A DNA stretch of 64,000 bases from Piromyces finnis finn (lineage: Eukaryota; Fungi; Neocallimastigomycota): the NCBI GenBank assembly GCA_002104945.1, contig MCFH01000038.1:1-64000 (forward strand), given 5' to 3'. The notes beneath the pieces are model-generated. The model searched no databases. It was given only the letters and a program-made list of their open reading frames with translations, and was not told the DNA's origin. Each line of letters begins with the position of its first letter. Position 1 is the first letter of the stretch. Shown here in pieces: positions 9,211 through 45,885 of this stretch. The position numbers and the translations under genes are program-made.

Positions 9211-9215
9211 CTTAA

Positions 9216-9505: not shown

Positions 9506-11403
9506 TAAAATAAAATAAACATATGATTAATCATTTAAACAGTTGATCCTAATTAGTAATTATAAAAACTATTCAATTAATAATTCATCATTATTAATTG
9601 ATATTACCATAACATATTTGTTATAATTAAATAATTATTATTTTCAAAATTATTTCTAATAAAACTTGCCGTTAACCTATTTTATAATGATTAAGATTAT
9701 TTAATTTATAGGTGTTAACTGTTACACCTAAATGGGTCTAGTTCTATTTTTAGTAACAATCGTTATCATTAATTAAATTAATATAACTAAAATTCCTATT
9801 GATATATTTTTAATTTCATCAAGTCATAAGAAATATTTATGATCCATACTTGATATCATATTGATTTTAATTTACCTAATAAAATCTTTAAATGATCATA
9901 ACTTCCTTAAGTGATCAGTTAGAAGGACCGCGATTGTACCAAATTGTAGCTTTCTTCCTAAGCTTTCCAATAAACCTAGTTTCATCACCGTAGCACTTAC
10001 AGCCGTAGCGATCGTTTTTGGCGAGTTACACCTTATTTCGTACTTGCTTATTTTTGGTTAAGGGTTATAGTGTATTGATATTAAATTTTTGAAATCATAA
10101 CCCTTTCACTGAATCAAAATTTAAAAGGTGACTTTTAAAAGTGTTTTAAAATAATTATTGAAATTATTTAATTATAATTATTATGTTTAATTAATTATAG
10201 ATATTATCTGAATTTGTTTTAAATCCAGTTAATATCTTCACATGGTTTTGTAAAAGTTTTACTAAACTTATAATTTAATATTAAAATATTAGATTAAATA
10301 AAAGGTTAAAAGATAACTAGGTTAGAAAAAAAAATGTTTTATTAAAATAATCTTAATTGATTTATAAATGAATAATTAAATTATATATTATGGTTAAAAT
10401 AATTTCTTTTATTTTATTTAATGATATATTGCTAAAATATATAATAATAAGATTATTTAGTAGTAATACTCATTAAGTATTAATTATTATTAATAGTTAA
10501 TAATTTATAGTTAATAATTTAATAATTTATGGTTAATAATTTTTGGTTAATAATCTTTACAAAGATTTTAATTTCATAAACTATTCTAAACTATTTATAC
10601 TATTTGTAATTTTACATTTAATAATAAAATAACTTTTCAATACATGATTATATTCATAATATATTTTATAATACTTAAACTAAACTTAAGACTTATTCCT
10701 AATTATTAAAAAATAACTATTGTTTATAATATTCATAATATTAATTATTTCTTAATTATAATATAATTCATTGAATATAATATTAATAATTATAATCCTC
10801 TAGTTCAAAGATTATAAATTATGTTATTGAAATAATTATTATAAAATAAAGTTAATTAGTTCCGGAAAATAATTTTAATTTAATTAAACAATAATTTTTA
10901 TACTTTGAGTGAATGATTTATGTTTGATATATCAGGGGTGATCATTCTCTGAATAAACAATTAATCATTGCTAACAAAATATCTTTAAATTGGAATATCT
11001 CGTGAACCAGCAGAGATATTGACCTGATTTTAAGATATGTTGTTTGTCTCGAGCGTGGCTTTCTAACGAACGTAATTATAACCAAAATATTTTTATTCAA
11101 AAATCGTCATTCGTTGAGGAGATACGCGTGTTTTTTCTTATTCCATTTTAACGATAAGGGTTAAAGTTATTTATTATAAAAATTATTAAGGGTTAAGGTC
11201 ATATTTTAACCTTTCCTAAATTTTTAAATATTTCTTAATAAAATTTTATAATTTATTTGAAAATAAAATATTTGTTGATTTTGAAATTTCATAAGTGATT
11301 TCACAATTTCAAGTGATCTTGAAATTGTATTTTCACTAGTATTCGTGACAGGTTTCAATTGAAATATTTGTGGGCAAACTTATGGCCACAAATATTTCTT
11401 AAA
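9506..11403 (-). repeat. LTR-like segment X (9506-10248 plus 11356-11403) split by a solo LTR; its right end matches the U3 terminus of family F
   Basis: 11351-11400 matches 32780-32829 of the F- LTR end, but the terminal CA reads AA. The left part has a GC-richer island and TAACCCT motifs like the C-family U3. Confidence 0.5.
10249..11350 (-). mobile_element. Solo LTR of family C
   Basis: Reverse complement closely matches the C LTR 60176-61208 (TGTCACGAATAC...CTTTTACA). Flanked by TSD GGTTT (10244-10248 / 11351-11355). Confidence 0.93.
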
Positions 11404-11404
11404 A

Positions 11405-12344
11405 TGTAAGAAATATTAATTATTCATAATTGAATAATTATTATTTCTTATTATTTAATACAAATTTATTTAAATTATTATTTTCTATACATTCAACTAT
11501 TACTAATAATTTATTAAATTATTTAATATTTCATTCATTTAGTTAATACTTATGATTTACTTAAAATATTAATTTTATATACACTTATATAAAATATAAA
11601 ATTTATTTACTTGCTATATTCTTATATATTTAATTAACTTTATAAATTTATTTAATTATTAATTTTTATGTACATTTAAATAATATAAATAATTTATTTA
11701 CTTATTATTATCTTATACATTTAATTTTGACTAACTATATTCATTACACTTATTGTTTTAAATTATGTATTAATTATATTTTATGTATTGTATTAAGCAC
11801 GGATAAAATAGGAATCGGAATTTTAAGGTTTTCCCGATTTCGCTTTAAAGAAGCATTCGGTTTTACTTAAAATTACACGAAGATCAATATGACTAGAATA
11901 TTGATCGAAAATCATGTTTAGGTTTTTCTTCTAGTCTTTTCCTAAACATTTTATTTGTTAAGATTAGAACCCGTTTATTTAACCTTATTTTTTAATAAAA
12001 TTATAAATAAAACACTCTTGAAATTCCTTAGAAATTCAAGAGTTATTATTATAAAGGAATACGTTATAATAAATAACATAAATACATTTTTCTTTTTAAT
12101 TAAATAAAATATCCTTCTAATAAATCAGTAATTTAAATAAAAAAACTTACGACCCATTTGACTCTTTGTGTTTGGTTGTTTATTATAAATCTTTATAATA
12201 AACTCGATAAGTTTTATTTTTACTTTCTATTTTCTATTCTAATTTGTTCAATACTTCTTATTTCCGCATAATAATACTACAATATTATTCGTTAATATTA
12301 TTGTAGATAGTAATTTCTGTAAACAATAATAAGAAATTACTACA
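11405..12344 (+). mobile_element. Solo LTR of a G-related family
   Basis: TGTAAGAAATA...ATTACTACA. Shares blocks with the G LTR (TGTTTAGG...CCTAAACA; CTCTTGAA...TTCAAGAGTTATTAT). TSD TAAAA is restored once D is removed. Confidence 0.88.
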
Positions 12345-13040
12345 TAATGGTACAGAATTTTATTATAAGTACCTTTTTCTTTATTGTTTGGGACACTACA
12401 ACAGTTATAAATAACAAATTTATATTCTAGATGAATATTTTTTGATTATATATTATTTTATTATTTTGTTTATTATTTTATTATTTTTATTACAAGCTTT
12501 ATTATTTATAAGTATTATTTATTATTATTTTATATTATTATTTGTTTTAAAAATAGGTATAATCTTAGAAAATAAACTAATATTATTATTAATTCCTTCA
12601 CTAAATCTAACAATAATATTATTTATTCTTCTATTATTATCACCTTATCTTTATTTTATTTATAATATAACTAATATAAACTAACTAAAACTAACTAAAA
12701 ACTAAAAACTCTTCTTTTTTTTTTTTATATATATATACGCGTCTTTCTCTTCCTTATATAATTATATTTTTATCATCCTTATATTAAATTATAAAAAGTT
12801 TATTTTACTTTAATAAATTATTTATAAGTTATTAATTTAATTTAATTTACCATTCTTATTATTACTATAGTTATATAAATTTATTAAATAAAAATATTTA
12901 AATCCATATATATTATAAGGGTTATTTCATTTACCAAATATATGGATTTATTGCATTTTTCTGAATGTGGTGTACCAAGACATCCCGTCTTAGTTTGGAC
13001 TTCGTCCCTTGAAGTCCAATTTTAAATATTTTTTTTTTTA

Positions 13041-16000
13041 TTACAATTCAGAAAAATATGGAATTATATTCTTTAAGTGAATATTCCGTTCTGCAATTTC
13101 CCCTGAAATAGGATCACAAACTGTAACTGTATTAAATTCTTTCTTTATGATTTTTAAGGGTCCAGTAAAATAAGGGTCCAGTTTCCTTCTATTGAATACT
13201 TTAACTAATACTAAATCTCCAGGTTTATATGCGGCTCTCATTCGTTTACTCTGTCGTCTCCGGTCACTCCATAATTTATTGGCTGTTTCAATATTATCGA
13301 TGGCTTCTTGTATCCACTTATGATGTCTCACGAACTTCTGTATCCAATATTCCTCTTCGTTCTCATACTTATTCCTGTCTTTCATCAAAGATAGTTCGAA
13401 GGGTTGTAGATCTTTGCGTCCATATAGTAGTTCAAAGCTGCTGAACTTTGTAATTTCGTTTTTACAAGTTCTAAGAGCCCATAATGCACTAGGCAGTATT
13501 TCATCCCATTCATCTTCTTCATTACCTAATAGTTTCAGATATTTGATTATCTCCTTATTCCGGTTTTCCACTTCTCCATTAGATGCAGGGTGGTATGTCG
13601 ATACGTATTGGACGTACACGTCATGTAAATCCAGGAATGCCTTCGTCTTATCAGATCTAAATTGAGGCCCATTGTCTGTTACTAGAACCTCTGGAATACC
13701 ATGGCGAGAAAATACCCTCTTCAAAAAGTCAATGACATCATCGGATTCTATATTCTCCAAAGCCTCAGCCTCCACCCATTTAGTTAAATAGTCCACTAGA
13801 ACAATGATGTATTTATTGCCTTTATTTGTTATTGGCAACGGACCTACCAGATCAAGACCTACTCTTGAAAATGGTAAGCCTGGCTTTGTAGGTATGCTTT
13901 CAACAAAAAGGTTAGATTTCTGTGGCTTGAATTGTTGGCATCTTGGACAACACTTAATATAAATTTTTATATCGTTATTCATGCCCTTCCAATAAAATTC
14001 CTTCTTTAGCCTATGATAGGTCTTGTATATACCTTCATGTCCGATAGAATGAGCGGCTTCAATTAGTCTGAATTTTTCTTCGTCATCATCTATAATTCTT
14101 CTTAGTTTCCCATTACTCTTGTAGTATTGTATTCCATCCATAGTTATAAGTTTCCTATTAATAAAATCATTTATATTTTTATATTGATTATTATTCTCAC
14201 TTATTTTATTATTAGTAGTAGTATTACTATTGTTCTCCACGATCACGTTGATTGTTTGTTTGTTATGACTTGGTCTTGGTGCTAACTGACTTTCTTCCTT
14301 ACTGGTCAATCTTGATAGAGCGTCAGCTATTACATTCTTCTTTCCTTCTTCGTACAACACTTTGATTTTTAATATACTAAACGTAGTGACCCATTTAAGA
14401 TGTCGATTATTGGTTGGTTCGCTATTATTAATCAATCCAACTAGCGGTTTATGGTCGGTGATTAATTCAGTTTCCAACGTATTTCCTACTATATAATGCT
14501 TGAATTTCCTAGAACAATAATATGCAGCTGTCCCTTCTAAATCTGTTACACTATAGTTTTCTTCTGATTTATTCAGTGTCCTACTTACAAAGTGTAGTGG
14601 TTTCTCCATTCCATCTTCATCTATTTGTAAAATCACTCCACCTATCCCATTACGTGATGCATCTGTTCTAATCTTGAATGGTTTATCAAAATCCGGTGGC
14701 ATTAATATCGGAGCTTCTATTAGTCTTAATTTTAAGATTTCAAATGAATTATTCGCCTCTGGACTCCATTTGAACTCTTCGTCTTTCTTTAATAACTTAA
14801 ATAATGGTTTAGCATATTGTGCAAATTTATCAATAAATTTTCGGTAGTAACTTACAGCCCCTAAAAACGAACGCAATTGAGAAACATTTTTCGGTGGTAG
14901 CCAGTTCATGATTACCTGCGTTTTCCCCGGAATTGGTTTAATTCCTTCTTTAGATAATACATGGCCTAGCAATTCTACTTCTTCTTGAAAGAAGTGACAC
15001 TTCTCAATGTTGATTCTTAAACCATTTTCCCTGAGTATTTTAAAAACCTTTGATAAATCTCTAATATGTTCTTCCATTGTATTGGAAAAGACTATCAAAT
15101 CATCAATATAAATAAAGACACACTTCCCAATAAGGTCGAAGAAAATCCTGTTCATTTCTCTCTGGAAGGTAGCTGGGGCATTACATAACCCGAAAGGCAT
15201 TACCTTGAAATTATAGTTTCCATATATAGTGGTAAAACATGTAAGATCTTCATCCTCAGGATACATCGGAACTTGGTGGTAACCCGAAAACAAATCCATA
15301 GTAGTCAAAACAGCTTTCTTACCTACGTAGCACAGTATGTCATCAATTAGTGGTAGAGCGTAGGAATCCTTTATTGTACATTCATTTAAGCGTCGATAAT
15401 CCACACACATTCGGTATTTTCCATTTTTCTTAGGCACTAAGACTACAGGCGACGACCACGATGAATGGGATGGTTCAATTAATTTATTCTTAATCAGCTT
15501 GGTTAACTCCTCTTTCAATGCATCTGCTTGCACTTTTGATAGCCTATATGCTCGTTGTTTAAAAGGAAACGAGTTTGGCTTCAACCTGATACGATGAGGT
15601 AGTAATTTTGTTCTACTCAGATCGTCAGTTTTAACAGCGATAACATGATTAAATTTATCAAATAGCTTTCTTACTACATCTCTAATATCTTTCGGAATTT
15701 TATTCACAATATTATTAATAATATTTTCTTTTGTTTCTAACGTTCCTTCTTTTCCTTCATTCTGGGTAGACATCGCTACTGTTATTAACATTGGTGTTTC
15801 TTCTATAGTTTCCTCCTCTGAATCCTCCCCTTTAGATTCCTGGAGATTTACATCATAATGGAGGTCTGCAATTTTCATGGGAGAATTGTTTTTATCAATG
15901 TAATATAAATTATCATCCACAAAATTTAAACTAAACCTATTCCTTTTAAGGGAATCGATTCCAATTAATATATCAAAGATATCATCTTTTTCGATAACCC

Positions 16001-17123
16001 TAAATATCTCTGTGAAAGTCTTCTCGCCAATTGTGATTTTTAGTTTATATATATCCGTATTCGATGAAGTATTGGAATATGCCTGAAATATTGTCTCTGT
16101 AATATTTCCTACTGGCTGCTTGTGAATCCTAAATTTGCGGAGTGCTGACTTTGTTATCATATTAACGCTGGCACATGAATCTAAGAATATTTCAGCCTCC
16201 ACATCTTCTACCTTCCCGCGGACTTTGACAACTTTATGTTCTCCAAGCAAGGTGACAGCATTTGTTACTGCATTTTTGAATTTTGGTGTTAATTTCAACT
16301 TCTGGGCAAATGCTGTGCGGAATTTTGGGAACAGGTCTAATAAATTCACAAGTTTTGTTACCACTTCTGTTGAAGCTACTTCTTTAACTAAATCATCTAC
16401 CTTGAACTCTTCAAAACCATCCATTAGACGTATGTGTTTTTCAATATTTAAAATTTGTTCTTGCGGTGAGTTAGGGTTTATTTTATCTATTTCCTTCCTT
16501 TCTTGTTTCTTCATTTCAGCATTTCTTTCTTCCCGATTTTTCTTCTTTACATTCTCTATTCTTTTATCATTTAGATAGGATACATCCAAGTGTTCTAACT
16601 TCTCTACTTTGTTTAATTTTCTATTTTCCTTAGGAGTTGTTGCTTTGCTCTTATCATTCTTGCCCAATTCTTCATTTATATCATCCAACTCCTCTTCCAT
16701 TTCTTCTTTTCCTATGGTTTCTATTAACTTATTTTCATCTTTGGTTGATTTTCCATCAGAATCTATTGTTATAATTTCAGAAGTGTCCAAGTTCATCTCC
16801 TTATCATTATTATTTATATAATTCCTTCTCTTATCTAATTGCTCATTATACTTCATAGCAGCAGTTTTAATAGGCATAGGATTTCGCTGTAGTTTATTCT
16901 CATGCATTCTCTTTATTTGGCTGGTTGTTTCCTTGTGCGCATTTTTAGCTTTGCTATTTGTGTCTTTTGATTTCTTCGTTGCAACCAAGGTTATAGACGA
17001 AGGCTCTCGGTAATTATTATTTGAGGTATTAGTATTAATTATGGTTTTATCTACCGTTGGTTGTACCACCGATAGATTGGTTTGTTTACTGGGAGTTGTC
17101 CTTCTCCCAGAGTTTAGTTTAAA
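13041..17123 (-). CDS. pol: Pol of D (PR, RT, RNase H, IN), -1 frame from gag
   Basis: FLDSCAS protease, YIDDLIVF RT, RTDAS RNase H, HEG/CPRC zinc motif, TDNGPQF IN. The frame is open back to the slippery site at 17117-17123. Confidence 0.95.
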   Translation of the reverse strand, partial: FKLNSGRRTTPSKQTNLSVVQPTVDKTIINTNTSNNNYREPSSITLVATKKSKDTNSKAKNAHKETTSQIKRMHENKLQRNPMPIKTAAMKYNEQLDKRRNYINNNDKEMNLDTSEIITIDSDGKSTKDENKLIETIGKEEMEEELDDINEELGKNDKSKATTPKENRKLNKVEKLEHLDVSYLNDKRIENVKKKNREERNAEMKKQERKEIDKINPNSPQEQILNIEKHIRLMDGFEEFKVDDLVKEVASTEVVTKLVNLLDLFPKFRTAFAQKLKLTPKFKNAVTNAVTLLGEHKVVKVRGKVEDVEAEIFLDSCASVNMITKSALRKFRIHKQPVGNITETIFQAYSNTSSNTDIYKLKITIGEKTFTEIFRVIEKDDIFDILIGIDSLKRNRFSLNFVDDNLYYIDKNNSPMKIADLHYDVNLQESKGEDSEEETIEETPMLITVAMSTQNEGKEGTLETKENIINNIVNKIPKDIRDVVRKLFDKFNHVIAVKTDDLSRTKLLPHRIRLKPNSFPFKQRAYRLSKVQADALKEELTKLIKNKLIEPSHSSWSSPVVLVPKKNGKYRMCVDYRRLNECTIKDSYALPLIDDILCYVGKKAVLTTMDLFSGYHQVPMYPEDEDLTCFTTIYGNYNFKVMPFGLCNAPATFQREMNRIFFDLIGKCVFIYIDDLIVFSNTMEEHIRDLSKVFKILRENGLRINIEKCHFFQEEVELLGHVLSKEGIKPIPGKTQVIMNWLPPKNVSQLRSFLGAVSYYRKFIDKFAQYAKPLFKLLKKDEEFKWSPEANNSFEILKLRLIEAPILMPPDFDKPFKIRTDASRNGIGGVILQIDEDGMEKPLHFVSRTLNKSEENYSVTDLEGTAAYYCSRKFKHYIVGNTLETELITDHKPLVGLINNSEPTNNRHLKWVTTFSILKIKVLYEEGKKNVIADALSRLTSKEESQLAPRPSHNKQTINVIVENNSNTTTNNKISENNNQYKNINDFINRKLITMDGIQYYKSNGKLRRIIDDDEEKFRLIEAAHSIGHEGIYKTYHRLKKEFYWKGMNNDIKIYIKCCPRCQQFKPQKSNLFVESIPTKPGLPFSRVGLDLVGPLPITNKGNKYIIVLVDYLTKWVEAEALENIESDDVIDFLKRVFSRHGIPEVLVTDNGPQFRSDKTKAFLDLHDVYVQYVSTYHPASNGEVENRNKEIIKYLKLLGNEEDEWDEILPSALWALRTCKNEITKFSSFELLYGRKDLQPFELSLMKDRNKYENEEEYWIQKFVRHHKWIQEAIDNIETANKLWSDRRRQSKRMRAAYKPGDLVLVKVFNRRKLDPYFTGPLKIIKKEFNTVTVCDPISGEIAERNIHLKNIIPYFSEL
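17089..17123 (-). other. -1 ribosomal frameshift signal of D
   Basis: U UUA AAC heptamer, 6-nt spacer, CTGGGAG/CTCCCAG 7-bp stem. Confidence 0.85.
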
Positions 17124-18148
17124 AGCCCCTTTTCTTCCATTTCGGCAAGTTGTTTAAAAGTATATGGACATTCTATACGTTTGTGTCCATTTTGTCCACA
17201 TCTGAAACATTTTATATCGGAATTTCTTTCATCAATCTCCCTTGGAATAGCATTGGTTGGTTCTATCAGGGATACCCTTTTTTCCGCATTTCTTGTTGTA
17301 GAATAAGATTTATTCATGCCTTGATAAGGGATTAAACCCATTCTACTATTATTATCATTCTGTTGATTTACATAACCATTGGTGTTGCTCCAATTAGACT
17401 GTCCTCCATAAACTCTGCGGTAGCTAGTCCTAGTTCTATTGAAATATGGATATCTAAAGTTCTGGTTAATATTCTTCCTGTCGTAATATGAATTATGCGA
17501 ATCCTCTTTATTATCATTCATAAGTCCAGTATAAATCGGATGATTTAATAGAACATTATCACTTTGGGCAGCTAAAGTAACATTCCTTGTTCCTCTCCTT
17601 TGGTTAACTTGTTCCTTGTTTTTCTCTTTAATTTCTCTCTCAGTATTTTCAGCTCGTTCAGCAATTTTGTAAGCTTCTTGTAGGTTCTCACAATCAGACA
17701 TTCCTACCTGGGAGCACGGATAGACACGAGCACTAATAGAGTCTCTATATTCCTTCACTGTTATTAATTTCTGATATTCCCTACTTAGATTATGATACAA
17801 GTTTCGATATCTATAATTAAACTTTTTTATAGTTTCTCCTTCCGCAATATTCATGTTTCTAAGTAGGGTCCATTTATCTCCCTCAGTAATCTTCATATCT
17901 TCTTCGATGGCTATTTGTATTTCTTTAAGTGATGGGTAATGGACTTCATTATTTCTTCTTATTTTTAACCTTCTTACAACTTCTTTGGTATCAGACTCTA
18001 CTGCGGCCATAGCCCAATTATACACTTGTCTAGGCTCAATTAAATCATAGAGATCCAAAAATTCGTTCATATCCACTACCCATTCCCATACATTCTTCCC
18101 ATAGTTATCAAGTTTGGGAACCTCTTTACGTATAGTAGTTAAATCCAT
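17114..18148 (-). CDS. gag: Gag of D with CCHC knuckle
   Basis: 344 aa, CFRCGQNGHKRIEC, lies between the PBS and pol. Confidence 0.92.
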   Translation of the reverse strand: MDLTTIRKEVPKLDNYGKNVWEWVVDMNEFLDLYDLIEPRQVYNWAMAAVESDTKEVVRRLKIRRNNEVHYPSLKEIQIAIEEDMKITEGDKWTLLRNMNIAEGETIKKFNYRYRNLYHNLSREYQKLITVKEYRDSISARVYPCSQVGMSDCENLQEAYKIAERAENTEREIKEKNKEQVNQRRGTRNVTLAAQSDNVLLNHPIYTGLMNDNKEDSHNSYYDRKNINQNFRYPYFNRTRTSYRRVYGGQSNWSNTNGYVNQQNDNNSRMGLIPYQGMNKSYSTTRNAEKRVSLIEPTNAIPREIDERNSDIKCFRCGQNGHKRIECPYTFKQLAEMEEKGLLN

Positions 18149-18536
18149 TTCTCAAAGATGAACTAATATTACTCTTATTATTGTTTGTCTGTTTATTATA
18201 TCGCGTGATTTCTAATTGTATATATTTTTATATTTTATTATTATTAACACGCGTATTAATTATAAATTTATGTTATTTTTTATATATAAATATAAACTAT
18301 TTTATTTTAATAAATTTAATTCTTAGAACTACTTATATTATCGACTTTGGTGTAGAAGGCCTTTAGCTAAGAAGTTTTTCATTCAACAGCCGCGATCTAC
18401 CCAAAGCGGTTGGTGGAAATATGTGTATTCTTCAAATTAAATAATTAAAATAATATAATTTAATAGTTATATATAATTTATTATTATTATTATTATATAT
18501 ATTAATTTATTATTATTATTATTATTATTATAAATA

Positions 18537-18570
<34 letters not shown>

Positions 18571-18628
18571 TTTTTTTTGTATAATCTCTATCTATTACTC
18601 ATCTATTTTCATAAATTTGCTTGTTGTA

Positions 18629-18646
18629 CGCCCGGATTCTCCACCA
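18629..18646 (-). other. Primer-binding site complementary to the 3' 18 nt of a tRNA-Ala
   Basis: Plus strand reads CGCCCGGATTCTCCACCA. This maps to tRNA positions 59-76 with U70 (Ala G3:U70 identity) and A73. Confidence 0.85.
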
Positions 18647-32032: not shown

Positions 32033-32831
32033 TTCTAATTCGAAAATAAATTCTTTTAATAAATTAAAGAATTTATTATATAAAATATGGTTATAATGAA
32101 TTTTAAAATTTAAAAATAATGAATTTTTAATGCTAAACTATTAAAAAATAATTATTTTTAATAATAAATTTACTTCTTTTAAATATAATATTTGAATATT
32201 ATATAAAATATTGTAAATAATTATTATTAAACAATAATTTAAAATAAAATAAAATATGTTTTTTAAGAATTTTTTAATAACACTAACCTAATTAAAACTA
32301 AGCTAACGTAAGAACTAACTATAAAGCGTTAGTATTGTAAAAGGTTTATTATAATATTAGTTAATAGGTTATTAAATTAGTTAATTAAGTTAGTTATTAC
32401 CTCTCTATACGAGTTAATAACTAAATAAAGTTTTATAAAAAATAATAAAAGAAGGAAAATAAATATTATAACACTAAAATAAATATAAACACTTATATAA
32501 ATATTTTATGAAATAACTTTTACTTAAATAATTATATTTTAATTATATCTTTTATTTATTAATTATAATTATCTACATTAATTATTATTATAGTTATTAA
32601 TTTACTTTAATACTAACGCTAAAGTATTTAACGTTAGTTTTGACTATACTATTTAACTATATGAGTTTATTTTCTTTACCACTTGATTGGGTAAAGCAAA
32701 TAAACTTCCTATTTAATTAATAACCATTAATATATGGTTATGCATATATTTGGCCAATAAATGGTGACCAGAATATATGGTTTCAATTGAAATATTTGTG
32801 GGCAAACTTATGGCCACAAATATTTCTTACA
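28274..32831 (-). mobile_element. Truncated element F- (5' LTR 32336-32831; gag-PR-RT-partial RNase H; no IN, no 3' LTR)
   Basis: ORF 28253-32032 breaks off in RNase H after ELLAIR and reads into the inverted gag of F+. Confidence 0.93.
29455..29765 (-). repeat. 45-bp coding tandem repeat (about 7 x 15 aa) between PR and RT of F
   Basis: SNLEKTCVS(V/G)GL units. CTAAGT-like cores are spaced 45 bp apart. Confidence 0.9.
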
Positions 32832-33492
32832 ATGTTACAATGTTATATATTTCTTATATAATAACTTATTATTATCTTAATTTAATAACTTGAAGTTATT
32901 AAAAGTGATAATAATTTGTAACAAAAAAAAAAAATAAATAATTTGTTTTATTAAAACACAAAATCTATAAAAAAAATATAATGTTTTATTAATAACTATT
33001 TTATTAGTTAAATTTTATTAAAAAATAATGTGTTTATGATTATTAACTATACTAATAATAATGTTTAAATAAAGGAATTAAAAGATTATTTATATTTTTC
33101 TATTAATATAAACTTTAATTTATCTTCTTTAATTATGTTTTGTTATAAACAAATATTTAATTATAAATATCTAATTATTAATTACATTATAGTTTATTTA
33201 CATGTTAATAATATCGGAATTTTAAAAATAATTATTTGTTTATTTATTTATTTTTTACTTAAATACTAATTAATTATAACTAAATTTAACTTTGTTTTGA
33301 ATTATTATTTTAACATTTATTAATTTATTTCTACATTTAATTTTATCTTATTTATTTATTTATTATAAATTTGTTTTTAAGTTTAATATTAAATTGTTAA
33401 TTAGAACTTACTTATATAATTTTATTTCTTCATTAATAATTATTGTTGTTTTTATAATCATTTAAGTTTGCCTTATATCAATACCTTGGCGG

Positions 33493-36400: not shown

Positions 36401-37363
36401 TGGTTGCCTAGTTTTATTTCTAGTGTTATTTTTTTATTAGTGAGAATTTTTGTATTGTCAGCAGTCGTAATTTCCATTTCTTCGGCTTTATGAATTTCTG
36501 GATTTTTTAATTTATTTAAACCTCCTTTAGTTATTATATTGACGTTGGCACCTGTATCGAAAAGTATCTTTTGTTGATTTCCATTTACTTCACCAACGAC
36601 TATTGGAATTTCATAATTATGTATGGAGCTGATGATTCTTCTTGATTTTCCTTTAGTACCAAGTTCTAATTCTTTTCTTAAGGTGGGACTTATATTGAGT
36701 AGCTGTGAAAGTGTTATTTTTGGGTAATAAGTGCTTATTTCTTTAATAATATCAAATTTCTCAATTCCTTGATTTGGAATTAATTTTTTGGTAATTTCCG
36801 TAGACTTTTTCTTTTCATTATTCTTTTGTGCTTTATTTGTATTTTCTTCTTTCTTGGGAGTATTTTTATTCGTTTCCACAATATTTCTAGGACTATTATT
36901 CTTTTTAATTGACTGATTATTTTTGTTTTCTTGAATTGGATTGGTTTGACTTTCTTTAGTTTGTTCCGTGTTGACTATCACATTTTCGGACTCTTTTTCT
37001 TCGTTTTTATTGTGGTTGTCTTTATTGATTAGTGGTTCATCTTCATCTACAATAATTACTTCATCTTGCGTAGAGTCTGGATCTTCTATCATAGGTGTTC
37101 TCCTTCGAAGATCTCTAATCTTCTTTTTTTTGTTGTTTTATTAATCTTGTATTCGGCTGATTTAATATAGCTGGTTTAATTATTGGTTTATCGAAATTCT
37201 TTTTGTTTGAGTCGCTGATTTGTTTATTTTTCTTTATAGCATTAATACTAAATTTATTGTATTTCTGTTCATTCTTATATTGGAATTCTAAGTTTTCTGT
37301 TTCTGTATTATTTGCAATTTTGTTATAGTCGGAAGATTGCTTACTCCCCATAACTAATTTAAA
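33493..37363 (-). CDS. pol: Pol of E; broken by a 1-nt shift in an A8 run at 37124-37131 (ORFs 37115-37351 and 33493-37092)
   Basis: LFDTGA protease, YIDDIVVY RT, RTDAS, HEG/CHKC, TDNGSSF. Slippery U UUA AAU at 37357-37363. Confidence 0.9.
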
Positions 37364-38196
37364 TGTTGGATGTTTTCAGGACAATCATCAATGACATGAC
37401 CTATACGTTTACAATTTAGGCAAACATTTATCTTGAGTTCTGCTAATTTTTGGGTTATTTCTTTCATGTCGTTATTTTCTTCTTGATATTGTCTATAGTT
37501 TTTGTGCTTGTAATTATTATTCCATTGATTTTGATAAGTTTTATTTTCCTGTGGATGTATCGAGTTAGAGTTCGGATTATATAGTTTTGTTGTTTTATTT
37601 GTACTGTTATAAACATTCTTTTGTGATTGTGATGGCCTTTGATCATTTTTATTTTTATTCCGGTTGTCCTCTATTATATTATATAATCTTTCCTTTTTCG
37701 AAGTTATCTTCATTGCTTCTTCTAGAGTATTTGGCTCTTCTTCTAATAGTTTTTCATATATTCTAGTCCAATTTCTAAAGGCATTAACGTAATATGAAGC
37801 TATTATCTCTTCTGGAATTGACGTAGATTTTGTGGCTTCGTTCAAAATATTCATAAATCTCAAATCAAAGTCGCATATCTTTTCTCCTTTTCTTATACTT
37901 AGAGAAGATAAATCCAATATCTTAGAGTTCTTTGCTGAACTTCTTTTAAAATAGTTATTTAAATTATTTATTATTGTATTATACGAGTCAGGTGTACTCT
38001 TGTTTAATCCGTTTAACACGATAGTCCTAGCCTTTTGTTCTGTTAACGGTAGTAAAAATTTTATTTTATCCTTTTCTTCTATGTCATTAGAAGTACACCA
38101 GTACTCAAATTCAAACTTCCAATCTACAAATTTGGTTTTTCCATTTCCCAAAATTGGAAGTCTTGAAAAGGTTAACGTTTTTGTAGAAGTATCCAT
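37354..38196 (-). CDS. gag: Gag of E with CCHC knuckle
   Basis: 280 aa, CLNCKRIGHVIDDC. Confidence 0.9.
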   Translation of the reverse strand: MDTSTKTLTFSRLPILGNGKTKFVDWKFEFEYWCTSNDIEEKDKIKFLLPLTEQKARTIVLNGLNKSTPDSYNTIINNLNNYFKRSSAKNSKILDLSSLSIRKGEKICDFDLRFMNILNEATKSTSIPEEIIASYYVNAFRNWTRIYEKLLEEEPNTLEEAMKITSKKERLYNIIEDNRNKNKNDQRPSQSQKNVYNSTNKTTKLYNPNSNSIHPQENKTYQNQWNNNYKHKNYRQYQEENNDMKEITQKLAELKINVCLNCKRIGHVIDDCPENIQHLN

Positions 38197-38317
38197 TATT
38201 TTTGTATATCTTATCGAATTATTTATATAATAATAACTTATATTTTCTTAATATTAATATTTTATGATACTTCTTACTGTATGTTAATAGTAATAATATT
38301 GTTATTCTTTTTACTAT

Positions 38318-38359
<42 letters not shown>

Positions 38360-39512
38360 TTATTTAAATTAATTGTATGAATGATAATTTGTTAAACTTA
38401 TCCTAATTGAATATAGTAATTAATAATTGATACTGAAATCTTTATATATAATATTTGAGTGATATTTGAATATAATATTTTATAATATTTGAATGATGTT
38501 TGCATATAATTTTTCTAATATTTGAATATTATTTTGAATTATTTGAATATAATTTTTTTTATAATATTTGCATATTATTTTGAATTTTACTTTGAATATG
38601 ATATATTAATAATATTTAAATGATATTTGAATAAGCTTTTTAAAACATAGGTTCTTAATCTTGTCTTTTGAGTATGTAATACCTATATATATAAATATAA
38701 ATGTATAAATTTGTTAGTAAAAGAAAATTTTATATTACTCTTACCGGGTTAAAATGGATTCTCCACCATTGTTACAATGTTATATATTTCTTATATAATA
38801 ACTTATTATTATCTTAATTTAATAACTTGAAGTTATTAAAAGTGATAATAATTTGTAACAAAAAAAAAAAATAAATAATTTGTTTTATTAAAACACAAAA
38901 TCTATAAAAAAAATATAATGTTTTATTAATAACTATTTTATTAGTTAAATTTTATTAAAAAATAATGTGTTTATGATTATTAACTATACTAATAATAATG
39001 TTTAAATAAAGGAATTAAAAGATTATTTATATTTTTCTATTAATATAAACTTTAATTTATCTTCTTTAATTATGTTTTGTTATAAACAAATATTTAATTA
39101 TAAATATCTAATTATTAATTACATTATAGTTTATTTACATGTTAATAATATCGGAATTTTAAAAATAATTATTTGTTTATTTATTTATTTTTTACTTAAA
39201 TACTAATTAATTATAACTAAATTTAACTTTGTTTTGAATTATTATTTTAATATTTATTAATTTATTTCTACATTTAATTTTATCTTATTTATTTATTTAT
39301 TATAAATTTGTTTTTAAGTTTAATATTAAATTGTTAATTAGAACTTACTTATATAATTTTATTTCTTCATTAATAATTATTGTTGTTTTTATAATCATTT
39401 AAGTTTGCCTTATATCAACATGTAAGAAATAATAATTATTTCAATCTAAATAATTAATATTTCTTATTAGTTTAATAATTTATTTATTTATTTAGTTACA
39501 TAATATTCTATA

Positions 39513-39788
39513 CACTTAATTTATTTATTTAATTTATTTAGTTAAATAATATTTTATGCACTTAATTTATTTATTTAATTTATTTAGTTAAATAATATTT
39601 TATGCACTTAATTTATTTATTTAATTTATTTAGTTAAATAATATTTTATGCACTTAATTTATTTATTTAATTTATTTAGTTAAATAATATTTTATGCACT
39701 TAATTTATTTATTTAATTTATTTAGTTAAATAATATTTTATACACTTAATTTATTTATTTAATTTATTTAGTTAAATAATATTTTATA
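39513..39788. repeat. 46-bp tandem repeat x6 in U3 of the G LTR (also 44898-45173)
   Basis: Unit CACTTAATTTATTTATTTAATTTATTTAGTTAAATAATATTTTATG, six copies in each LTR. Confidence 0.93.
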
Positions 39789-40464
39789 CATTTGATTTTT
39801 AAATAATATTTATATATAAGAATCCTGTAATTTAATTGTGTATTACTAATTAATTTACATATTATATCTAAACACGGATTTACTTTAGGAAATCGGTATT
39901 TTAAGGTTTTCCCGATTATTATAATTGGTTTTACTTAAAATTTACACGATGACTAATATGATTAGAATATTGGTCGAAAACTTGTTTAGGTTTTTCTTCT
40001 AGTCTTTTCCTAAACATTTAATTTGTTAAGATTAGAACCCATTTATTTAACCTTAATTTCTAATAAAAATATAAATAAGACACTCTTGAAATTCTTTAGA
40101 AATTCAAGAGTTATTATTATAAGAAAAATTAATTATAATAAATAACAAATAATTCTATTTTAATAAAAAACATATTATTAAAACATAATTTTAATACATC
40201 TCACTCTTATCCTCCTTCCCATTTGTGTTTTTGTTGTTTATTATAAATCCTTATAATAAACTCGCTAAGTTCTAATCTTAATTCTATATTTAATTTTTTA
40301 TTATTTTTTTCTTTCTATATACATATAATTTAATATTAAATTTTAATATTGAGTTATCAATAAGTAATTATATTGTACTATTTATTATATACATTACAAT
40401 ATAATTACTACAATAATAACTCTTCTCCAACAAACATTGAAAAAAAAAAAAAAAATACACCAAT

Positions 40465-40503
<39 letters not shown>

Positions 40504-40592
40504 GAATAAAATAAAATATTAAACCAATCAATTAAAAAAAAAAAAGAATAATAATAATAATAATTAGAATTAGAATAATAATAATTAGAATA

Positions 40593-40626
<34 letters not shown>

Positions 40627-40724
40627 AAATAAAATAAAATAATTATATATTTATATATATTTCCATCACTAATACTATTTTTTTTTATATAATATATTAT
40701 TTCAATAATATTGGAAAAAATAAT

Positions 40725-43700
40725 ATGGACTACCCCGAACGTAATGAAATAAATATTGCTCAAAATATTAATGAAAAAAATAATGGAGTACAAGATCCCC
40801 AAACTTCCAAGCTTATCACAGCTATTACTGATTTCATTCCTGCTTTTTTTTCCCCTAATGGCATCCTTTCTAAAGAGAATGAAACAAAAAATCCAGCAAA
40901 TATACTTGAAACTTTAATTCAAAGTGAAGAATTTTTTAAGGAACATCCAGAATCCTTTAGAAATGAAGAATCAAGAACCTCTTTTGTAATCAATAAATTG
41001 TCTGGAAATGCAAGAAAATGGGGACTCTCCCTCTTAATAGATGGAACTATTAAGAAAATAAGCTATGATCAATTTAAGAATCTTCTACTGGATAATTTCG
41101 ATGTTGGAAGTGAAAGGAAGCAGAAATATGTGATAATGGAAAAGCTGTGGAAACTTAAGCAACTCCAGTTAGGTAGTGTTGTTGAATACACTATCGAATT
41201 TCGAAGGTTGGCTGGACGTCTAGGATGGCCTGATGAAGTACTAATTGATATAATTGGAAAAGGTCTTGATAATCGTGTTCGTGACGAATTTGATAAGTTA
41301 GAAAAACCCAATTCATTATTTGATGCAACTAACATAATTATAGGATTAGATAAGAAATGTTATTTAGAAAATTGTCTAAGGGAAAAGAACAGAAATTCTA
41401 GAGATAGCAAATCCTATTTTAAAAGGAGAAAAGAACTAAACAAAATAGAAAAACACTCAAAGCACTTTCATCAAAGGAAAAATAAATTCAAAAATGACAT
41501 ACTCTCTGCAAATTATACTCCGAATGGGAAGACATCCATTACTACATCATTTTACCTATTTGTAAATGGAAAAAACGTAAAGGTAAATTTACTAATAGAT
41601 TCAGGTTCTGCAAGAAGTTTTATATGTAAGAACTTTGCTAACAATACCAAAATTCAAACTTCTGGACTCTCCTCTCCCATAAACATTCAACTTCCAAACG
41701 GAAAGAGTATGACAATAAAGCAAACTACCAAACCTCTGAAGTTGAAGATAATGGACCATTCAGAGACTTTTGAGTTTTGCATTGCTGACCTCTCTCTTCA
41801 AGGTATTAATGGAATTCTCGGAAGGGATTGGTTATCCTTACACAATCCCTTCATCAATTATAAAACCAATAAAATTTACTTCATCGGTAGTTTCTGTGGG
41901 TCTCACTGTCCCTCCTCAAAAAAGAACAAAATTTTTAGACAATACGATAATATTACTGCTTCCATGGTAGAAGATAAGGAAGCAAATAAGAAAAATAATC
42001 TCGATTCTATTATTCCTGATATGATCTCTGAGGATGGTCTTCTTGATACAGACTTTTGCGCAGCTATGCCTATTGGTGAAGAAACAAATAACAATGATCA
42101 GACTAAGTATGTGATAATTAGCCAGTATTACTCTGACCTTAAATCAGTTTTTGAAAAGAAAGAAGCCGAGAAACTACCACCTCACCGGGAATATGATATT
42201 TCTATAGACCTTATCCCTGGTGGTCAATTATATTTTGGACCAATATACTCCCTCACTGTACCCGAAATGAACACGTTAAAGGAGTATATTAAAGATAATT
42301 TAAAAAAGAACTTCATTAGAAAATCCAAATCGCCTGCTGGAGCCCCAGTTCTCTTTGTTAAGAAACACGATGGAACCCTTAGATTGTGTGTTGATTACAG
42401 ACGTCTGAATGCCATCACCATTCGTAATAGCTACCCGATCCCAAGAATCAATGATCTAATTGAATCTTTTAAAGGCGCTAATATTTATACCCGCTTAGAC
42501 CTCAGATCTGCATACAATTTGGTAAGGGTTAAAGAAGGTCACGAATATCTCACTGCTTTCAGGACACCGTTAGGGCATTTCGAATATCTGGTGATGCCTT
42601 TTGGATTAAGAAATGCTCCATCTGTATTTCAACGTTTTGTCCAAGATACCCTTAACAACACCATAGGATCCTTTGTGCAAGTATATCTTGATGATATCAT
42701 CATCTACTCTTGTTCCCTCCAAGAGCATATAAATCACGTTCGGATAGTTCTTAAATTACTCCTGGATAATGGATTATACGTTAAGTTGGAGAAATGTGAC
42801 TTTCATGTTTCTGAAACTACATTCTTAGGTTTTACTGTTTCTACTAAGGGTTTGTCTATGGATAAGAATAAGGTTAAGTCAGTATTAGACTGGCCGATAC
42901 CAAAAAATATTAAGGAATTACAAAGCTTTCTTGGTCTTTGTAATTTCTACAGAAAATTCATCAAAGATTTCGCTTCTTACATGGAACCTTTGCGTAAATT
43001 GCTAAAAAAGGGTAATGAATTTATTTGGGATGACTGTGCTGAAAACTCTTTTAATAAATTAAAGGACGCATTTAGAGTCGGAGAAATATTAATCTTTCCT
43101 GATCCGGAAAAAGAGTATATTGTCGAAACCGACGCAAGCGATTTTGCTGTTGGTTGTGTTCTCTCCCAAATCAGCGATCTTGATAATTTATTACATCCAG
43201 TTGCCTTCCACTCCAGATCACTTAACAATGCCGAAACTAATTATACTATATACGATAAAGAACTTTTGGCAATTATAACTGCTTTCGATACCTGGAGACA
43301 CCATCTGGAAGGTGCTAAGTACCCCGTTCAGATAATTACAGATCACAAAAATCTGTTATATCTTAAGAAGCCTCAGCATCTAAACCAAAGGCAGATACGC
43401 TGGAGCCTTTTTCTTTCTAAATTTGATTTTAGAATTGCATTCAGGCCAGGTTCAAAAAGTGGGAAACCCGACGCGTTATCAAGACGACCAGACTATAAAA
43501 AAAACACTAATATGAAACCTGTAACGATATTTAATAATAATGATGTATTTTGTTGCTCAATGAATGATAATATTGACAACCTTATCAGTGCTCAAAAAGG
43601 CGACAAATTTTGTCGAAATACTTTAAATAAAATTAAATCGAGCTCCGGAAACATTAATAGTTCATTATTTAGTCTTATTGATGGTGTTTTACATTTCCAA

Positions 43701-44810
43701 AAACGCATCATCGTTCCATCTTCGCTCAAGGTAAGATTACTTAAATCCTTCCATGATGCTCCAACTAGTGGCCATCAGGGGGTAGATAGGACTTTTGAAA
43801 AACTCAAAAGATCCTACTGGTGGCCTAATATGAAGAAAGATATCTCAAATTATGTTCTTTCGTGTGATGTCTGCAGTAGAGGTAAGATTCGTAGACATAA
43901 GCCTTATGGTAAATTATTACCTCTTCCTATTCCTACAAAACCCTGGGAAGTTATTGGCGTTGATTTTATTGTCTTTTTGCCTCCATCTAAAGATTGTACA
44001 TGCATCATGGTTGCTGCTGATCATCTAACAAAGATGGTTCATCTAGTGCCTTGTGCAGACGTCCCCTCTGCTGACCTCACTGCTAAACTCCTATTGTCCC
44101 AAGTGTTCAGATATCATGGATTTCCTAAAGTAATAGTTTCTGACCATGGCTCTCAATTTTCATCTCAATTTTGGACTTCTTTATGCTCCGCTATTCATGC
44201 TAAACCAAGTCTTGCTACCGCTTTCCATCAACAATCCAATGGACAAATTGAGAGAGCGAATGCTGTCATCGAACAGTATCTTAGATGTTATTGTTCTTCA
44301 TCCCAAAATGAATGGTGCTACTATCTCCCTCTCTGTGAAATGGCATATAACAACTCTATTAATAGATCAATTAATCAAACACCATTTCACGCTAATTATG
44401 GATTCCATCCCAATTGCACTATTGATTCCCCTCCGATTCTCCTAAAGGATAATGCTTCTGTACTAACAAGAAATTGGGCCTCTCATTTTGACGCACTTCG
44501 ACAACACCTTATAAAAGCTAAAGAGGATTTCAAAAAATTTGGTGATAGAAAAAAATCCGTTGGACCCTCTTTACAAATTAATGATTTAGTAATGTTGAGA
44601 AGACATTATTTTTCTAACGAACCTTCTAAGAAACTTTCCACTCAATATCTTGGACCATTTCGTATTTTGGAGAAGAGGGAAAGAATGAACTACCGCTTGG
44701 AATTACCAGAAAACTTACACCTACATCCGGTATTTCATATATCCCAATTAGAGCCATATATAAATAGAAACGACGATTTGAAGGAACCAGATATAAAAGG
44801 GGCAATGTAA
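40725..44810 (+). CDS. gag-pol: Gag-Pol polyprotein of G
   Basis: LIDSGS, YLDDIIIY, ETDAS, HDAP..GH/CDVC, SDHGSQF, GPF motif. The stop codon lies inside the first 5 nt of the 3' LTR. Confidence 0.97.
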   Translation: MDYPERNEINIAQNINEKNNGVQDPQTSKLITAITDFIPAFFSPNGILSKENETKNPANILETLIQSEEFFKEHPESFRNEESRTSFVINKLSGNARKWGLSLLIDGTIKKISYDQFKNLLLDNFDVGSERKQKYVIMEKLWKLKQLQLGSVVEYTIEFRRLAGRLGWPDEVLIDIIGKGLDNRVRDEFDKLEKPNSLFDATNIIIGLDKKCYLENCLREKNRNSRDSKSYFKRRKELNKIEKHSKHFHQRKNKFKNDILSANYTPNGKTSITTSFYLFVNGKNVKVNLLIDSGSARSFICKNFANNTKIQTSGLSSPINIQLPNGKSMTIKQTTKPLKLKIMDHSETFEFCIADLSLQGINGILGRDWLSLHNPFINYKTNKIYFIGSFCGSHCPSSKKNKIFRQYDNITASMVEDKEANKKNNLDSIIPDMISEDGLLDTDFCAAMPIGEETNNNDQTKYVIISQYYSDLKSVFEKKEAEKLPPHREYDISIDLIPGGQLYFGPIYSLTVPEMNTLKEYIKDNLKKNFIRKSKSPAGAPVLFVKKHDGTLRLCVDYRRLNAITIRNSYPIPRINDLIESFKGANIYTRLDLRSAYNLVRVKEGHEYLTAFRTPLGHFEYLVMPFGLRNAPSVFQRFVQDTLNNTIGSFVQVYLDDIIIYSCSLQEHINHVRIVLKLLLDNGLYVKLEKCDFHVSETTFLGFTVSTKGLSMDKNKVKSVLDWPIPKNIKELQSFLGLCNFYRKFIKDFASYMEPLRKLLKKGNEFIWDDCAENSFNKLKDAFRVGEILIFPDPEKEYIVETDASDFAVGCVLSQISDLDNLLHPVAFHSRSLNNAETNYTIYDKELLAIITAFDTWRHHLEGAKYPVQIITDHKNLLYLKKPQHLNQRQIRWSLFLSKFDFRIAFRPGSKSGKPDALSRRPDYKKNTNMKPVTIFNNNDVFCCSMNDNIDNLISAQKGDKFCRNTLNKIKSSSGNINSSLFSLIDGVLHFQKRIIVPSSLKVRLLKSFHDAPTSGHQGVDRTFEKLKRSYWWPNMKKDISNYVLSCDVCSRGKIRRHKPYGKLLPLPIPTKPWEVIGVDFIVFLPPSKDCTCIMVAADHLTKMVHLVPCADVPSADLTAKLLLSQVFRYHGFPKVIVSDHGSQFSSQFWTSLCSAIHAKPSLATAFHQQSNGQIERANAVIEQYLRCYCSSSQNEWCYYLPLCEMAYNNSINRSINQTPFHANYGFHPNCTIDSPPILLKDNASVLTRNWASHFDALRQHLIKAKEDFKKFGDRKKSVGPSLQINDLVMLRRHYFSNEPSKKLSTQYLGPFRILEKRERMNYRLELPENLHLHPVFHISQLEPYINRNDDLKEPDIKGAM

Positions 44811-45813
44811 GAAATAATAATTATTTCAATCTAAATAATTAATATTTCTTATTAGTTTAATAATTTATTTATTTATTTAGTTACATAATATTCTATACAC
44901 TTAATTTATTTATTTAATTTATTTAGTTAAATAATATTTTATGCACTTAATTTATTTATTTAATTTATTTAGTTAAATAATATTTTATGCACTTAATTTA
45001 TTTATTTAATTTATTTAGTTAAATAATATTTTATGCACTTAATTTATTTATTTAATTTATTTAGTTAAATAATATTTTATGCACTTAATTTATTTATTTA
45101 ATTTATTTAGTTAAATAATATTTTATACACTTAATTTATTTATTTAATTTATTTAGTTAAATAATATTTTATACATTTGATTTTTAAATAATATTTATAT
45201 ATAAGAATCCTGTAATTTAATTGTGTATTACTAATTAATTTACATATTATATCTAAACACGGATTTACTTTAGGAAATCGGTATTTTAAGGTTTTCCCGA
45301 TTATTATAATTGGTTTTACTTAAAATTTACACGATGACTAATATGATTAGAATATTGGTCGAAAACTTGTTTAGGTTTTTCTTCTAGTCTTTTCCTAAAC
45401 ATTTAATTTGTTAAGATTAGAACCCATTTATTTAACCTTAATTTCTAATAAAAATATAAATAAGACACTCTTGAAATTCTTTAGAAATTCAAGAGTTATT
45501 ATTATAAGAAAAATTAATTATAATAAATAACAAATAATTCTATTTTAATAAAAAACATATTATTAAAACATAATTTTAATACATCTCACTCTTATCCTCC
45601 TTCCCATTTGTGTTTTTGTTGTTTATTATAAATCCTTATAATAAACTCGCTAAGTTCTAATCTTAATTCTATATTTAATTTTTTATTATTTTTTTCTTTC
45701 TATATACATATAATTTAATATTAAATTTTAATATTGAGTTATCAATAAGTAATTATATTGTACTATTTATTATATACATTACAATATAATTACTACACAA
45801 CAATTATTATAAA

Positions 45814-45885
45814 AGCAGCGTAGCGCAGTGGAAGCGTGGTGGGCTCATAACCCACAGGTCGTATGATCGAAACATACCGCTGCTA
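45814..45885 (+). tRNA. tRNA-iMet (CAT), cytosolic initiator
   Basis: Cloverleaf with A1:T72, three G-C pairs at the base of the anticodon stem, CAT anticodon, ATCGAAA T-loop (A54/A60), and a T-run downstream. Confidence 0.97.

What the first reader, a model, noticed from the sequence alone, without database searches (positions are those of the whole stretch)
11400..45885. A ~34-kb stack of LTR retrotransposons built by serial insertion 11-16 nt upstream of one tRNA-iMet gene
Seen: G ends 16 nt before tRNA-iMet (TSD CAACA). That TSD includes the last 2 nt of E's LTR, so removing G restores E's TSD ACAA, with E 14 nt from the tRNA. ACAA includes the last 3 nt of F-'s LTR, so removing E leaves F- 11 nt from the tRNA (flank ATTATTATAAA). 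On the left, removing D (TSD ATAA) restores the solo-LTR TSD TAAAA, followed by TT and then F+. The left remnant TAAAATT and the right remnant ATTATTATAAA overlap into one ancestral flank, TAAAATTATTATAAA-tRNA. Inferred order and distance: X (11 nt), G-like solo LTR (15), D (16), F+ (13), F- (11), E (14), G (16). Each newcomer pushes the older ones away, and both orientations occur. Established: yeast Ty3 and Dictyostelium DGLT-A insert near the Pol III start upstream of tRNA genes. I know of no report of this in anaerobic gut fungi, but I cannot check the literature. The G/E/F- part is directly supported; the link to the left half crosses the deleted F+/F- junction and is inference.
Basis: partly seen in the sequence, partly recalled or inferred. 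Interest (0 to 1): 0.92.

Follow-up and report, generated by a model that had tools for sequence, protein, structure and literature searches.

The report
Retrotransposon stack upstream of tRNA-iMet
In this anaerobic gut fungus, Ty3-like retrotransposons inserted one after another at almost the same base just upstream of an initiator tRNA gene; this is the yeast Ty3 habit, apparently unreported in this phylum, and other families use a second exact spot about 65 bases upstream.

Summary
G (39421-45797), E (32833-39417) and F- (28274-32831) lie 16, 14 and 11 nt from tRNA-iMet (45814-45885). Each target-site duplication (TSD) contains the last bases of the older neighbour's LTR, which fixes the order F-, then E, then G.

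All elements are Ty3/gypsy. Only the two that ignore the tRNA distance (A, C) carry a chromodomain.

Genome-wide, 37 of 57 independent tRNA upstream regions have a CA-ended repeat end 10-18 nt upstream. Decoy positions gave 12 of 449 and downstream flanks 0 of 57. Families keep their own offsets elsewhere: F 11-13, E 14, D 15-16, G-like 16.

New here: a second tier. Families Y, Z and H end 64-67 nt upstream of tRNAs whatever sequence lies between (16 of 57 regions against 0 of 449 decoys). In the window Z and Y sit 54 and 53 nt inside remnant X, which is 65 and 64 nt from the tRNA if X was 11 nt away.

The stack really runs from the contig start to 45797. tRNA-Cys (53336-53407) carries a smaller two-tier stack.

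Verdict: Ty3-like Pol III-directed integration in a new phylum. Other windows of this genome gave this scan the same picture.

The parts
1..10242 (-). Element Z, second-tier family. Its tRNA-side LTR is about 2462-2569 plus 9216-10242. Internal part and ORF 1407-2429 lie to the left, cut by the contig start.
   Evidence: The LTR (about 1135 nt) recurs in many loci, ending 64-66 nt from tRNAs. L020 matches 2.9 kb of it.
2570..9210 (-). Element A, a chromodomain-bearing Ty3/gypsy element nested in Z's LTR. TSD CTTAA.
   Evidence: 94% identical to C. Its insertion is not tied to a tRNA distance.
10249..11350 (-). Solo LTR Y, second-tier family. TSD GGTTT.
   Evidence: It sits 53 nt inside X. Other Y ends lie 64-67 nt from tRNAs.
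11351..11403 (-). X: the last 53 nt of an F-like LTR, the oldest proximal resident.
   Evidence: Identical to the F LTR end except CTTAAA for CTTACA.
11405..12344 (+). G-like solo LTR. TSD TAAAA. Inferred 15 nt from the tRNA.
   Evidence: 76.6% identical to the G LTR, with the same termini.
12348..19281 (-). Element D, Ty3/gypsy. LTRs 630 nt, 99.7% alike. TSD ATAA. Inferred 16 nt from the tRNA.
   Evidence: D-type ends lie 15-16 nt from other tRNAs.
19290..28273 (+). F+: the first about 2090 nt of an F element (19290-20641 and 27540-28273), split by C.
   Evidence: It starts exactly at the TG of the LTR with flank AAATT.
20642..27534 (-). Element C, a chromovirus nested in F+. Identical LTRs. 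TSD ACAAC.
   Evidence: F- is the matching empty site.
28274..32831 (-). F-: the first 4558 nt of an F element (gag to RNase H), 11 nt from the tRNA once E and G are removed.
32833..39417 (-). Element E, Ty3/gypsy. LTRs 648 nt, 99.7% alike. TSD ACAA. 14 nt from the tRNA once G is removed.
39421..45797 (+). Element G, Ty3/gypsy. Identical 992-nt LTRs, one 1361-aa gag-pol ORF, TSD CAACA. The youngest element.
45798..45813 (.). 16-nt flank: G's TSD copy CAACA plus the 11 nt ATTATTATAAA.
45814..45885 (+). Initiator tRNA-Met gene, the target.
53336..53407 (-). tRNA-Cys gene, the second target in the window.
53423..53472 (.). 50-nt end of another LTR element (it ends ATTATTTATCA when read towards the tRNA), 15 nt from tRNA-Cys. 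It resumes at 61214.
53473..60171 (+). Element H, Ty3/gypsy, 65 nt upstream of tRNA-Cys. TSD ATAAT.
60177..61208 (+). Solo LTR Y', flanked by the same ATAAT: the same target site used before H.

Best explanation
This is a two-tier pile of Ty3/gypsy LTR retrotransposons built by repeated, position-directed integration upstream of one Pol III gene.

Proximal-tier families (F, E, D, G and at least five others in the genome) integrate 11-18 nt before the mature 5' end of a tRNA gene, about where the Pol III start site should lie. Each family has its own offset of one to three bases. Every newcomer lands between the tRNA and the previous resident and pushes it outward. The array therefore reads oldest to youngest towards the tRNA: X, G-like solo LTR, D, F+, F-, E, G.

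Distal-tier families (Z, Y, H) integrate 64-67 nt upstream. Z and Y therefore cut into X while X was still the resident next to the tRNA. Chromodomain-bearing A and C later landed inside the pile with no relation to the tRNA.

Shown: the anatomy, the TSDs, the order F-, E, G, and the genome-wide distances. Inferred: the integrases are tethered to TFIIIB on the tRNA gene, as Ty3 integrase is to TBP and Brf1. The distal families may dock on its upstream edge. A deletion removed the 3' parts of F+ and F-.
For: - Junctions and nested TSDs.
- Ty3/gypsy domain order in all elements, with a chromodomain only in A and C.
- G pol matches Ty3 Gag-Pol from the intasome-TFIIIB structure 7q5b at E 1e-140, through the integrase.
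- 37 of 57 tRNA upstream contexts have a CA-ended repeat end at 10-18 nt, against 12 of 449 decoys and 0 of 57 downstream flanks; Fisher p 3e-31.
- 21 F ends lie 11-13 nt from ten or so kinds of tRNA, with 0 in the control.
- E lies at 14 nt, D at 15-16, G-like at 16.
- A filled and empty paralogue pair for F exists at tRNA-Glu (L024 against L005), and F has 5-nt TSDs.
- Distal tier: 16 of 57 contexts against 0 of 449 decoys, p 8e-17. 41 Y ends lie upstream of an A-box motif (total match lengths put most at 64-67 nt) across unrelated intervening LTR ends. H ends do the same.
- The same Y-inside-F-end arrangement occurs at three other places (C15, C78, C176).
- LTR pair identity fits the order: G 100%, E and D 99.7%.
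Against: - No Pol III start site is mapped, so distances are to the mature tRNA end only.
- No binding data exist.
- The link between left and right halves rests on a 3-nt overlap (ATT) plus distance logic.
- The F+/F- junction is seen only in this assembly. Contigs of the same sample's runs come from other F copies and do not bridge it.
- F+ has the minority orientation for its family (2 against 21).
- Only about 10-15% of all F or Y LTR ends are next to a recognisable tRNA. Inner LTR ends and displaced older copies are expected to make up much of the rest.
- The tRNA sample is 60 loci dominated by four isoacceptor kinds.
Confidence: 0.85

Rival explanations
1. Two stacks were fused. The left half (Z to F+) was built upstream of a different tRNA gene. 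A deletion from F+ to F- removed that gene and joined the two piles.
For: The region between F+ and F- is missing. tRNA genes here are often clustered. The left and right flanks overlap by only ATT.
Against: No tRNA remnant is present. The scenario needs a deletion with both ends inside the same family in opposite orientations. All inferred distances already fit the single 11-nt flank.
Confidence: 0.12
2. The F+/F- inverted junction is an assembly chimera, so the left and right halves are not contiguous in the genome.
For: Inverted repeat joins are a known long-read artefact. No contig in the available runs bridges 28273/28274.
Against: The arms differ at 7 positions. Only one arm carries C with a clean TSD, and the arms are unequal in length (2090 against 4558 nt), unlike a simple fold-back read.
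Confidence: 0.08
3. There is no targeting. Insertions are random and only those in harmless spots near tRNA genes survive, or the elements home into each other's LTR ends by sequence.
For: Selection does shape transposon landscapes. Many insertions lie inside older LTRs.
Against: Insertion positions are precise to the base, with family-specific offsets. There are 0 of 57 ends in the mirrored downstream window. The distance to the tRNA stays constant across unrelated intervening sequences. Flanks and tRNA kinds differ.
Confidence: 0.03

Closest known systems
Saccharomyces cerevisiae Ty3 (also Ty3p, S. japonicus Tj1, Yarrowia Tyl3/Ylt1/Tyl6, Candida Tca8/beta)
   Same: A Ty3/gypsy element without a working chromodomain, with a 5-bp TSD, inserted in either orientation within a few bases of the Pol III start upstream of tRNA genes (PMC5911963, PMC8632968). 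G pol is the best match to Ty3 Gag-Pol among solved structures.
   Different: The host is an early-diverging fungus, not an ascomycete. Many families coexist, and their pol proteins are as little as 28-32% identical. Each family has its own offset. The E/D lineage makes 4-bp TSDs. Occupancy of tRNA genes is very high and deep stacks form. The TFIIIB dependence is untested.
Dictyostelium DGLT-A
   Same: An LTR element without a chromodomain found 13-33 bp upstream of the mature tRNA coding start, often as solo LTRs (PMC5006619, PMC6101501).
   Different: DGLT-A is in Amoebozoa, with few and mostly dead copies. The families here are numerous and include copies with identical LTRs. Kinship was not tested here.
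Dictyostelid TRE5 and NLTR-B (non-LTR elements about 40-64 bp upstream of tRNA genes)
   Same: A second, discrete upstream position, comparable to the 64-67 nt tier used by Y, Z and H (PMC5911963 Table 1).
   Different: Those are L1-type non-LTR elements that use target-primed reverse transcription. Y, Z and H are integrase-bearing LTR elements with 5-bp TSDs.
Ty1/Ty2/Ty4 (copia) upstream of Pol III genes
   Same: They prefer the upstream side of tRNA genes.
   Different: They use a broad window of about 1 kb with nucleosomal periodicity, through Pol III subunit AC40. That is not base-precise, and the domain order is different.

Membership tests
Ty3/gypsy (Metaviridae) LTR retrotransposons | Order gag, protease, RT, RNase H, integrase, between LTRs that start TG and end CA | tested here: met
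   (Pfam domains in G, E, D, F-, C, H). (termini).
Ty3/gypsy (Metaviridae) LTR retrotransposons | Short target-site duplication flanking each insertion | tested here: met
   5 nt for G, F, C, A, H, Y. 4 nt for E and D.
Ty3-like Pol III start-site targeting elements | Insertions confined to a window of a few bases just upstream of tRNA genes, genome-wide | tested here: met
Ty3-like Pol III start-site targeting elements | The window coincides with the Pol III transcription start site | not testable with these tools
   No start-site data. 11-18 nt from the mature end is compatible with a short leader.
Ty3-like Pol III start-site targeting elements | Integrase binds TFIIIB (TBP/Brf1) and needs it for targeting | not tested
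   No binding prediction or assay was run. This is inference from Ty3 (PMC8632968).
Ty3-like Pol III start-site targeting elements | No functional chromodomain of the heterochromatin-reading kind | tested here: met
   No Pfam Chromo hit in G, E, D, H. There is a hit in C, which ignores the tRNA distance; A, its 94% relative, was not itself scanned. A vestigial fold was not examined.
Ty3-like Pol III start-site targeting elements | Both orientations occur | tested here: met
   (F in both orientations), with a 21:2 bias.
TRE5-like distal upstream targeting | Non-LTR (L1-type) element | tested here: not met
   H is a full Ty3/gypsy element. Y and Z are LTRs with TSDs. The resemblance is in geometry only.

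The most novel reading that the evidence does not exclude
TFIIIB on a tRNA gene offers two docking faces, and this fungus has LTR retrotransposons specialised for each. Many families use the start-site face (11-18 nt). A separate set (Y, Z, H) uses the upstream face (64-67 nt). That distal geometry is so far known only for non-LTR elements of social amoebae. Because most tRNA genes carry an LTR end at the TFIIIB site, LTR termini may now supply the upstream promoter context of the host's tRNA genes.
Probability: 0.4. Interest if true: 0.75.

Novelty: new member of a known kind. Interest (0 to 1): 0.6.

Why it matters
Base-precise targeting of tRNA genes by Ty3/gypsy elements is a model for how integrases read host chromatin and find safe sites. 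The known cases are ascomycete yeasts and social amoebae.

An early-diverging fungal phylum is a natural comparison set. It has many deeply diverged families (pol proteins as little as 28-32% identical) that share the target but differ in offset, TSD length and orientation bias. It also has LTR families at a second exact position. This allows mapping of which integrase parts set the distance to TFIIIB.

The stacks are also dated insertion records. They may help explain how the tRNA genes of these AT-rich genomes keep working with foreign DNA at their promoters. Anaerobic gut fungi lack genetic tools, so an integrase with a predictable safe landing site is of practical interest.

Tried and rejected
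I used composite patterns (LTR end, gap, A-box motif) for counts instead and did not try to get letters another way.
- Sequencing runs: all four are from one sample, probably the assembly's own. The contigs come from other F copies and break at 28274, so they neither confirm nor refute the F+/F- junction.
- Exact 17-mer of the G LTR end plus A-box: this found only the window itself. A 10-mer found two more iMet loci at 16 nt, but its reversed control also gave three hits, so the count alone is weak.
- Relatives of G in metagenomes: the contigs are short and carry no tRNA, so they are uninformative on conservation.
- One metagenome contig with an identical iMet 5' part (L065) shows a sequence ending GTATCA 14 nt upstream and an E-lineage element nearby. 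This is a single suggestive case and may be a chimeric assembly.
- One class of Y and H matches with shorter gaps looked like a tRNA mimic inside an LTR. I read it instead as Y or H abutting the outer end of a Z LTR in second-tier stacks, with a chance A-box-like word inside Z.
- A fold-back duplication as the origin of F+ was rejected, because F+ begins exactly at the LTR terminus and differs from F- at 7 positions.
- No complex prediction was run.

Full report
**Anatomy.** The window is the first 64 kb of contig C165 of a 56.5-Mb, 232-contig genome with 26% G+C.
- A host aldo/keto reductase gene at 46772-47647 is 92% identical to a Piromyces sp. E2 protein. The next named hits are Neocallimastix and Anaeromyces. 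The organism is therefore an anaerobic gut fungus, probably a Piromyces.
- ARAGORN and Rfam find only two RNA genes: tRNA-Met(CAT) at 45814-45885 (+) and tRNA-Cys at 53336-53407 (-).
- The Met tRNA has initiator hallmarks.
- Self-BLAST and junction reading define the elements listed under parts.

**The directly shown part.** G has identical 992-nt LTRs and TSD CAACA, and ends 16 nt from the tRNA.
- G's left TSD copy contains the terminal CA of E's LTR.
- With G removed, E has TSD ACAA and lies 14 nt away. Its left TSD copy contains the terminal ACA of F-.
- With E removed, F- lies 11 nt away.
- A TSD can only contain a neighbour's last bases if that neighbour was already there, so the order is F-, E, G. 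The opposite order would leave E with unequal flanks.
- LTR pair identities agree with this order: G 100%, E 99.7%.

**What the elements are.** All coding elements have the Ty3/gypsy domain order.
- C carries a chromodomain, and A is its 94% relative. These are the two elements whose positions have no relation to the tRNA: A sits inside Z's LTR and C inside F+.
- G, E, D and H have no Pfam chromodomain. F- is truncated before the integrase.
- G's pol is most similar, among solved structures, to Ty3 Gag-Pol in the intasome-TFIIIB complex (7q5b, E 1e-140).
- Pol identities show two deep lineages: E/D (43% to each other, 28-35% to G, H and A/C and about 40% to F) and G/F/H/A/C (46-59%).
- E and D share a primer-binding-site-like word and make 4-nt TSDs. 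The other elements make 5-nt TSDs.

**Genome-wide test, centred on tRNAs.** I fetched 60 high-scoring tRNA loci, found 96 tRNAs in them and reduced them to 57 independent upstream contexts.
- A CA-terminated repeat end shared with other loci lies 10-18 nt upstream in 37 of 57 contexts. Decoy anchors in the same loci gave 12 of 449, and mirrored downstream flanks gave 0 of 57. Fisher p is 3e-31.
- Several of the negatives are visibly decayed LTR ends, so 65% is a lower bound.

**Genome-wide test, centred on LTRs.**
- The F end followed by an A-box word gives 21 hits, all 11-13 nt from about ten different tRNA kinds, with none in the reversed control. About 220 F ends exist in all.
- E-type ends lie at 14 nt.
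- D-type ends lie at 15-16 nt.
- G-like ends lie at 16 nt before two other iMet loci.
- The F LTR is 497 nt and occurs in both orientations at the same site, with a 21:2 bias for its U3 end facing the tRNA.
- L024 against L005 is a filled and empty pair for an F solo LTR 11 nt before tRNA-Glu.

**Second tier.** Y-type LTR ends are followed by a tRNA at 64-67 nt whatever LTR fragment lies between them (41 composite hits out of 221 ends). H-type ends behave the same way.
- In the 57 contexts, 16 have such an end at 60-70 nt, against 0 of 449 decoys (p 8e-17). Almost no repeat ends fall elsewhere between 25 and 120 nt.
- At tRNA-Cys in the window, a 50-nt LTR remnant lies at 15 nt. Y' and then H used the same ATAAT target at 65 nt.

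**The left half.** After Z, Y, the solo LTR and D are removed with their TSDs, X is followed by ATT and then F+.
- The 3-nt overlap alone is weak evidence.
- The new support is that Z and Y cut X 54 and 53 nt from its end. That is 65 and 64 nt from the tRNA if X was adjacent to it. The same arrangement of Y inside an F end occurs next to real tRNAs elsewhere.
- This shows that the left half was built on a tRNA target. That the target was this iMet gene is the parsimonious reading.
- F+ is an independent insertion, because it has an exact LTR terminus and differs from F- at 7 positions. The missing 3' parts imply a deletion of about 6 kb between two inverted copies.
- The available runs could not verify the junction.

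**Mechanism and comparison.** Ty3 integrase contacts TBP and Brf1 and cuts at -6 and -2 from the start site, giving a 5-bp TSD (PMC8632968).
- Known relatives with this habit are ascomycete elements and DGLT-A (PMC5911963, PMC5006619).
- I infer the same tethering here. The distal families may dock at the upstream edge of TFIIIB, a geometry known for the non-LTR elements TRE5 and NLTR-B.
- Searches of the paper library found no account of this in Neocallimastigomycota or other early-diverging fungi.
- Earlier notes of this scan describe similar stacks, and the second site, at other tRNAs of this genome. I tested both claims independently here.

Noticed in passing
window 46772-47647 and 48647-49522: Two tandem 291-aa aldo/keto reductase genes. 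Outside anaerobic fungi, the best matches are bacterial at 64-68% identity, which suggests an old horizontal transfer followed by duplication.
   Followed up: partly
window 39282-39903 and 44713-45288: About eight tandem 46-nt units inside each G LTR. There are also 21/63-nt repeats in C (26364-26741), 45-nt repeats in F- (29435-29762) and long A runs after G's 5' LTR (40429-40640).
   Followed up: no
G000 C135:110927-115091; C13:1063166-1065390; C47, C74, C79: Y-type LTR ends recur at fixed spacings. The 1037-nt spacing equals LTR plus TSD. Spacings of 1104 nt and about 2785 nt also occur. These could be runs of solo LTRs stacked at one site, or tandem amplification.
   Followed up: no
L022 about 2960-3000 (G000 C184, upstream of 47448): An LTR end sits inside the T-arm of the tRNA-Glu gene of a Glu-Arg pair, 28 nt before tRNA-Arg. 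This insertion destroyed a tRNA gene.
   Followed up: no
loci L003-L056: Closely spaced same-strand tRNA pairs (Glu-Arg, Gly-Thr; spacers 2-10 nt) are common. LTR ends then sit upstream of the first gene of the pair.
   Followed up: partly
L065 5700-5900 (metagenome contig JAEEGK010061198.1): In another organism's contig, an iMet gene with an identical 42-nt 5' part has a sequence ending GTATCA 14 nt upstream. An E-lineage gypsy element lies beside it and a second tRNA starts 2 nt downstream.
   Followed up: partly
window 33480-33500, 18650-18660, 40413-40450: D and E share the word TGGTGGAGAATCC just inside the 5' LTR, which is likely a tRNA primer site. G, H, A and C show no TGG-type primer site there.
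   Followed up: no
shorter-gap class (e.g. G000 C35:59050, C181:306011, C214:176245, C228:110922): Y or H ends abut the outer end of Z-type LTRs with varying 5-nt flanks. I read this as second-tier stacking.
   Followed up: partly
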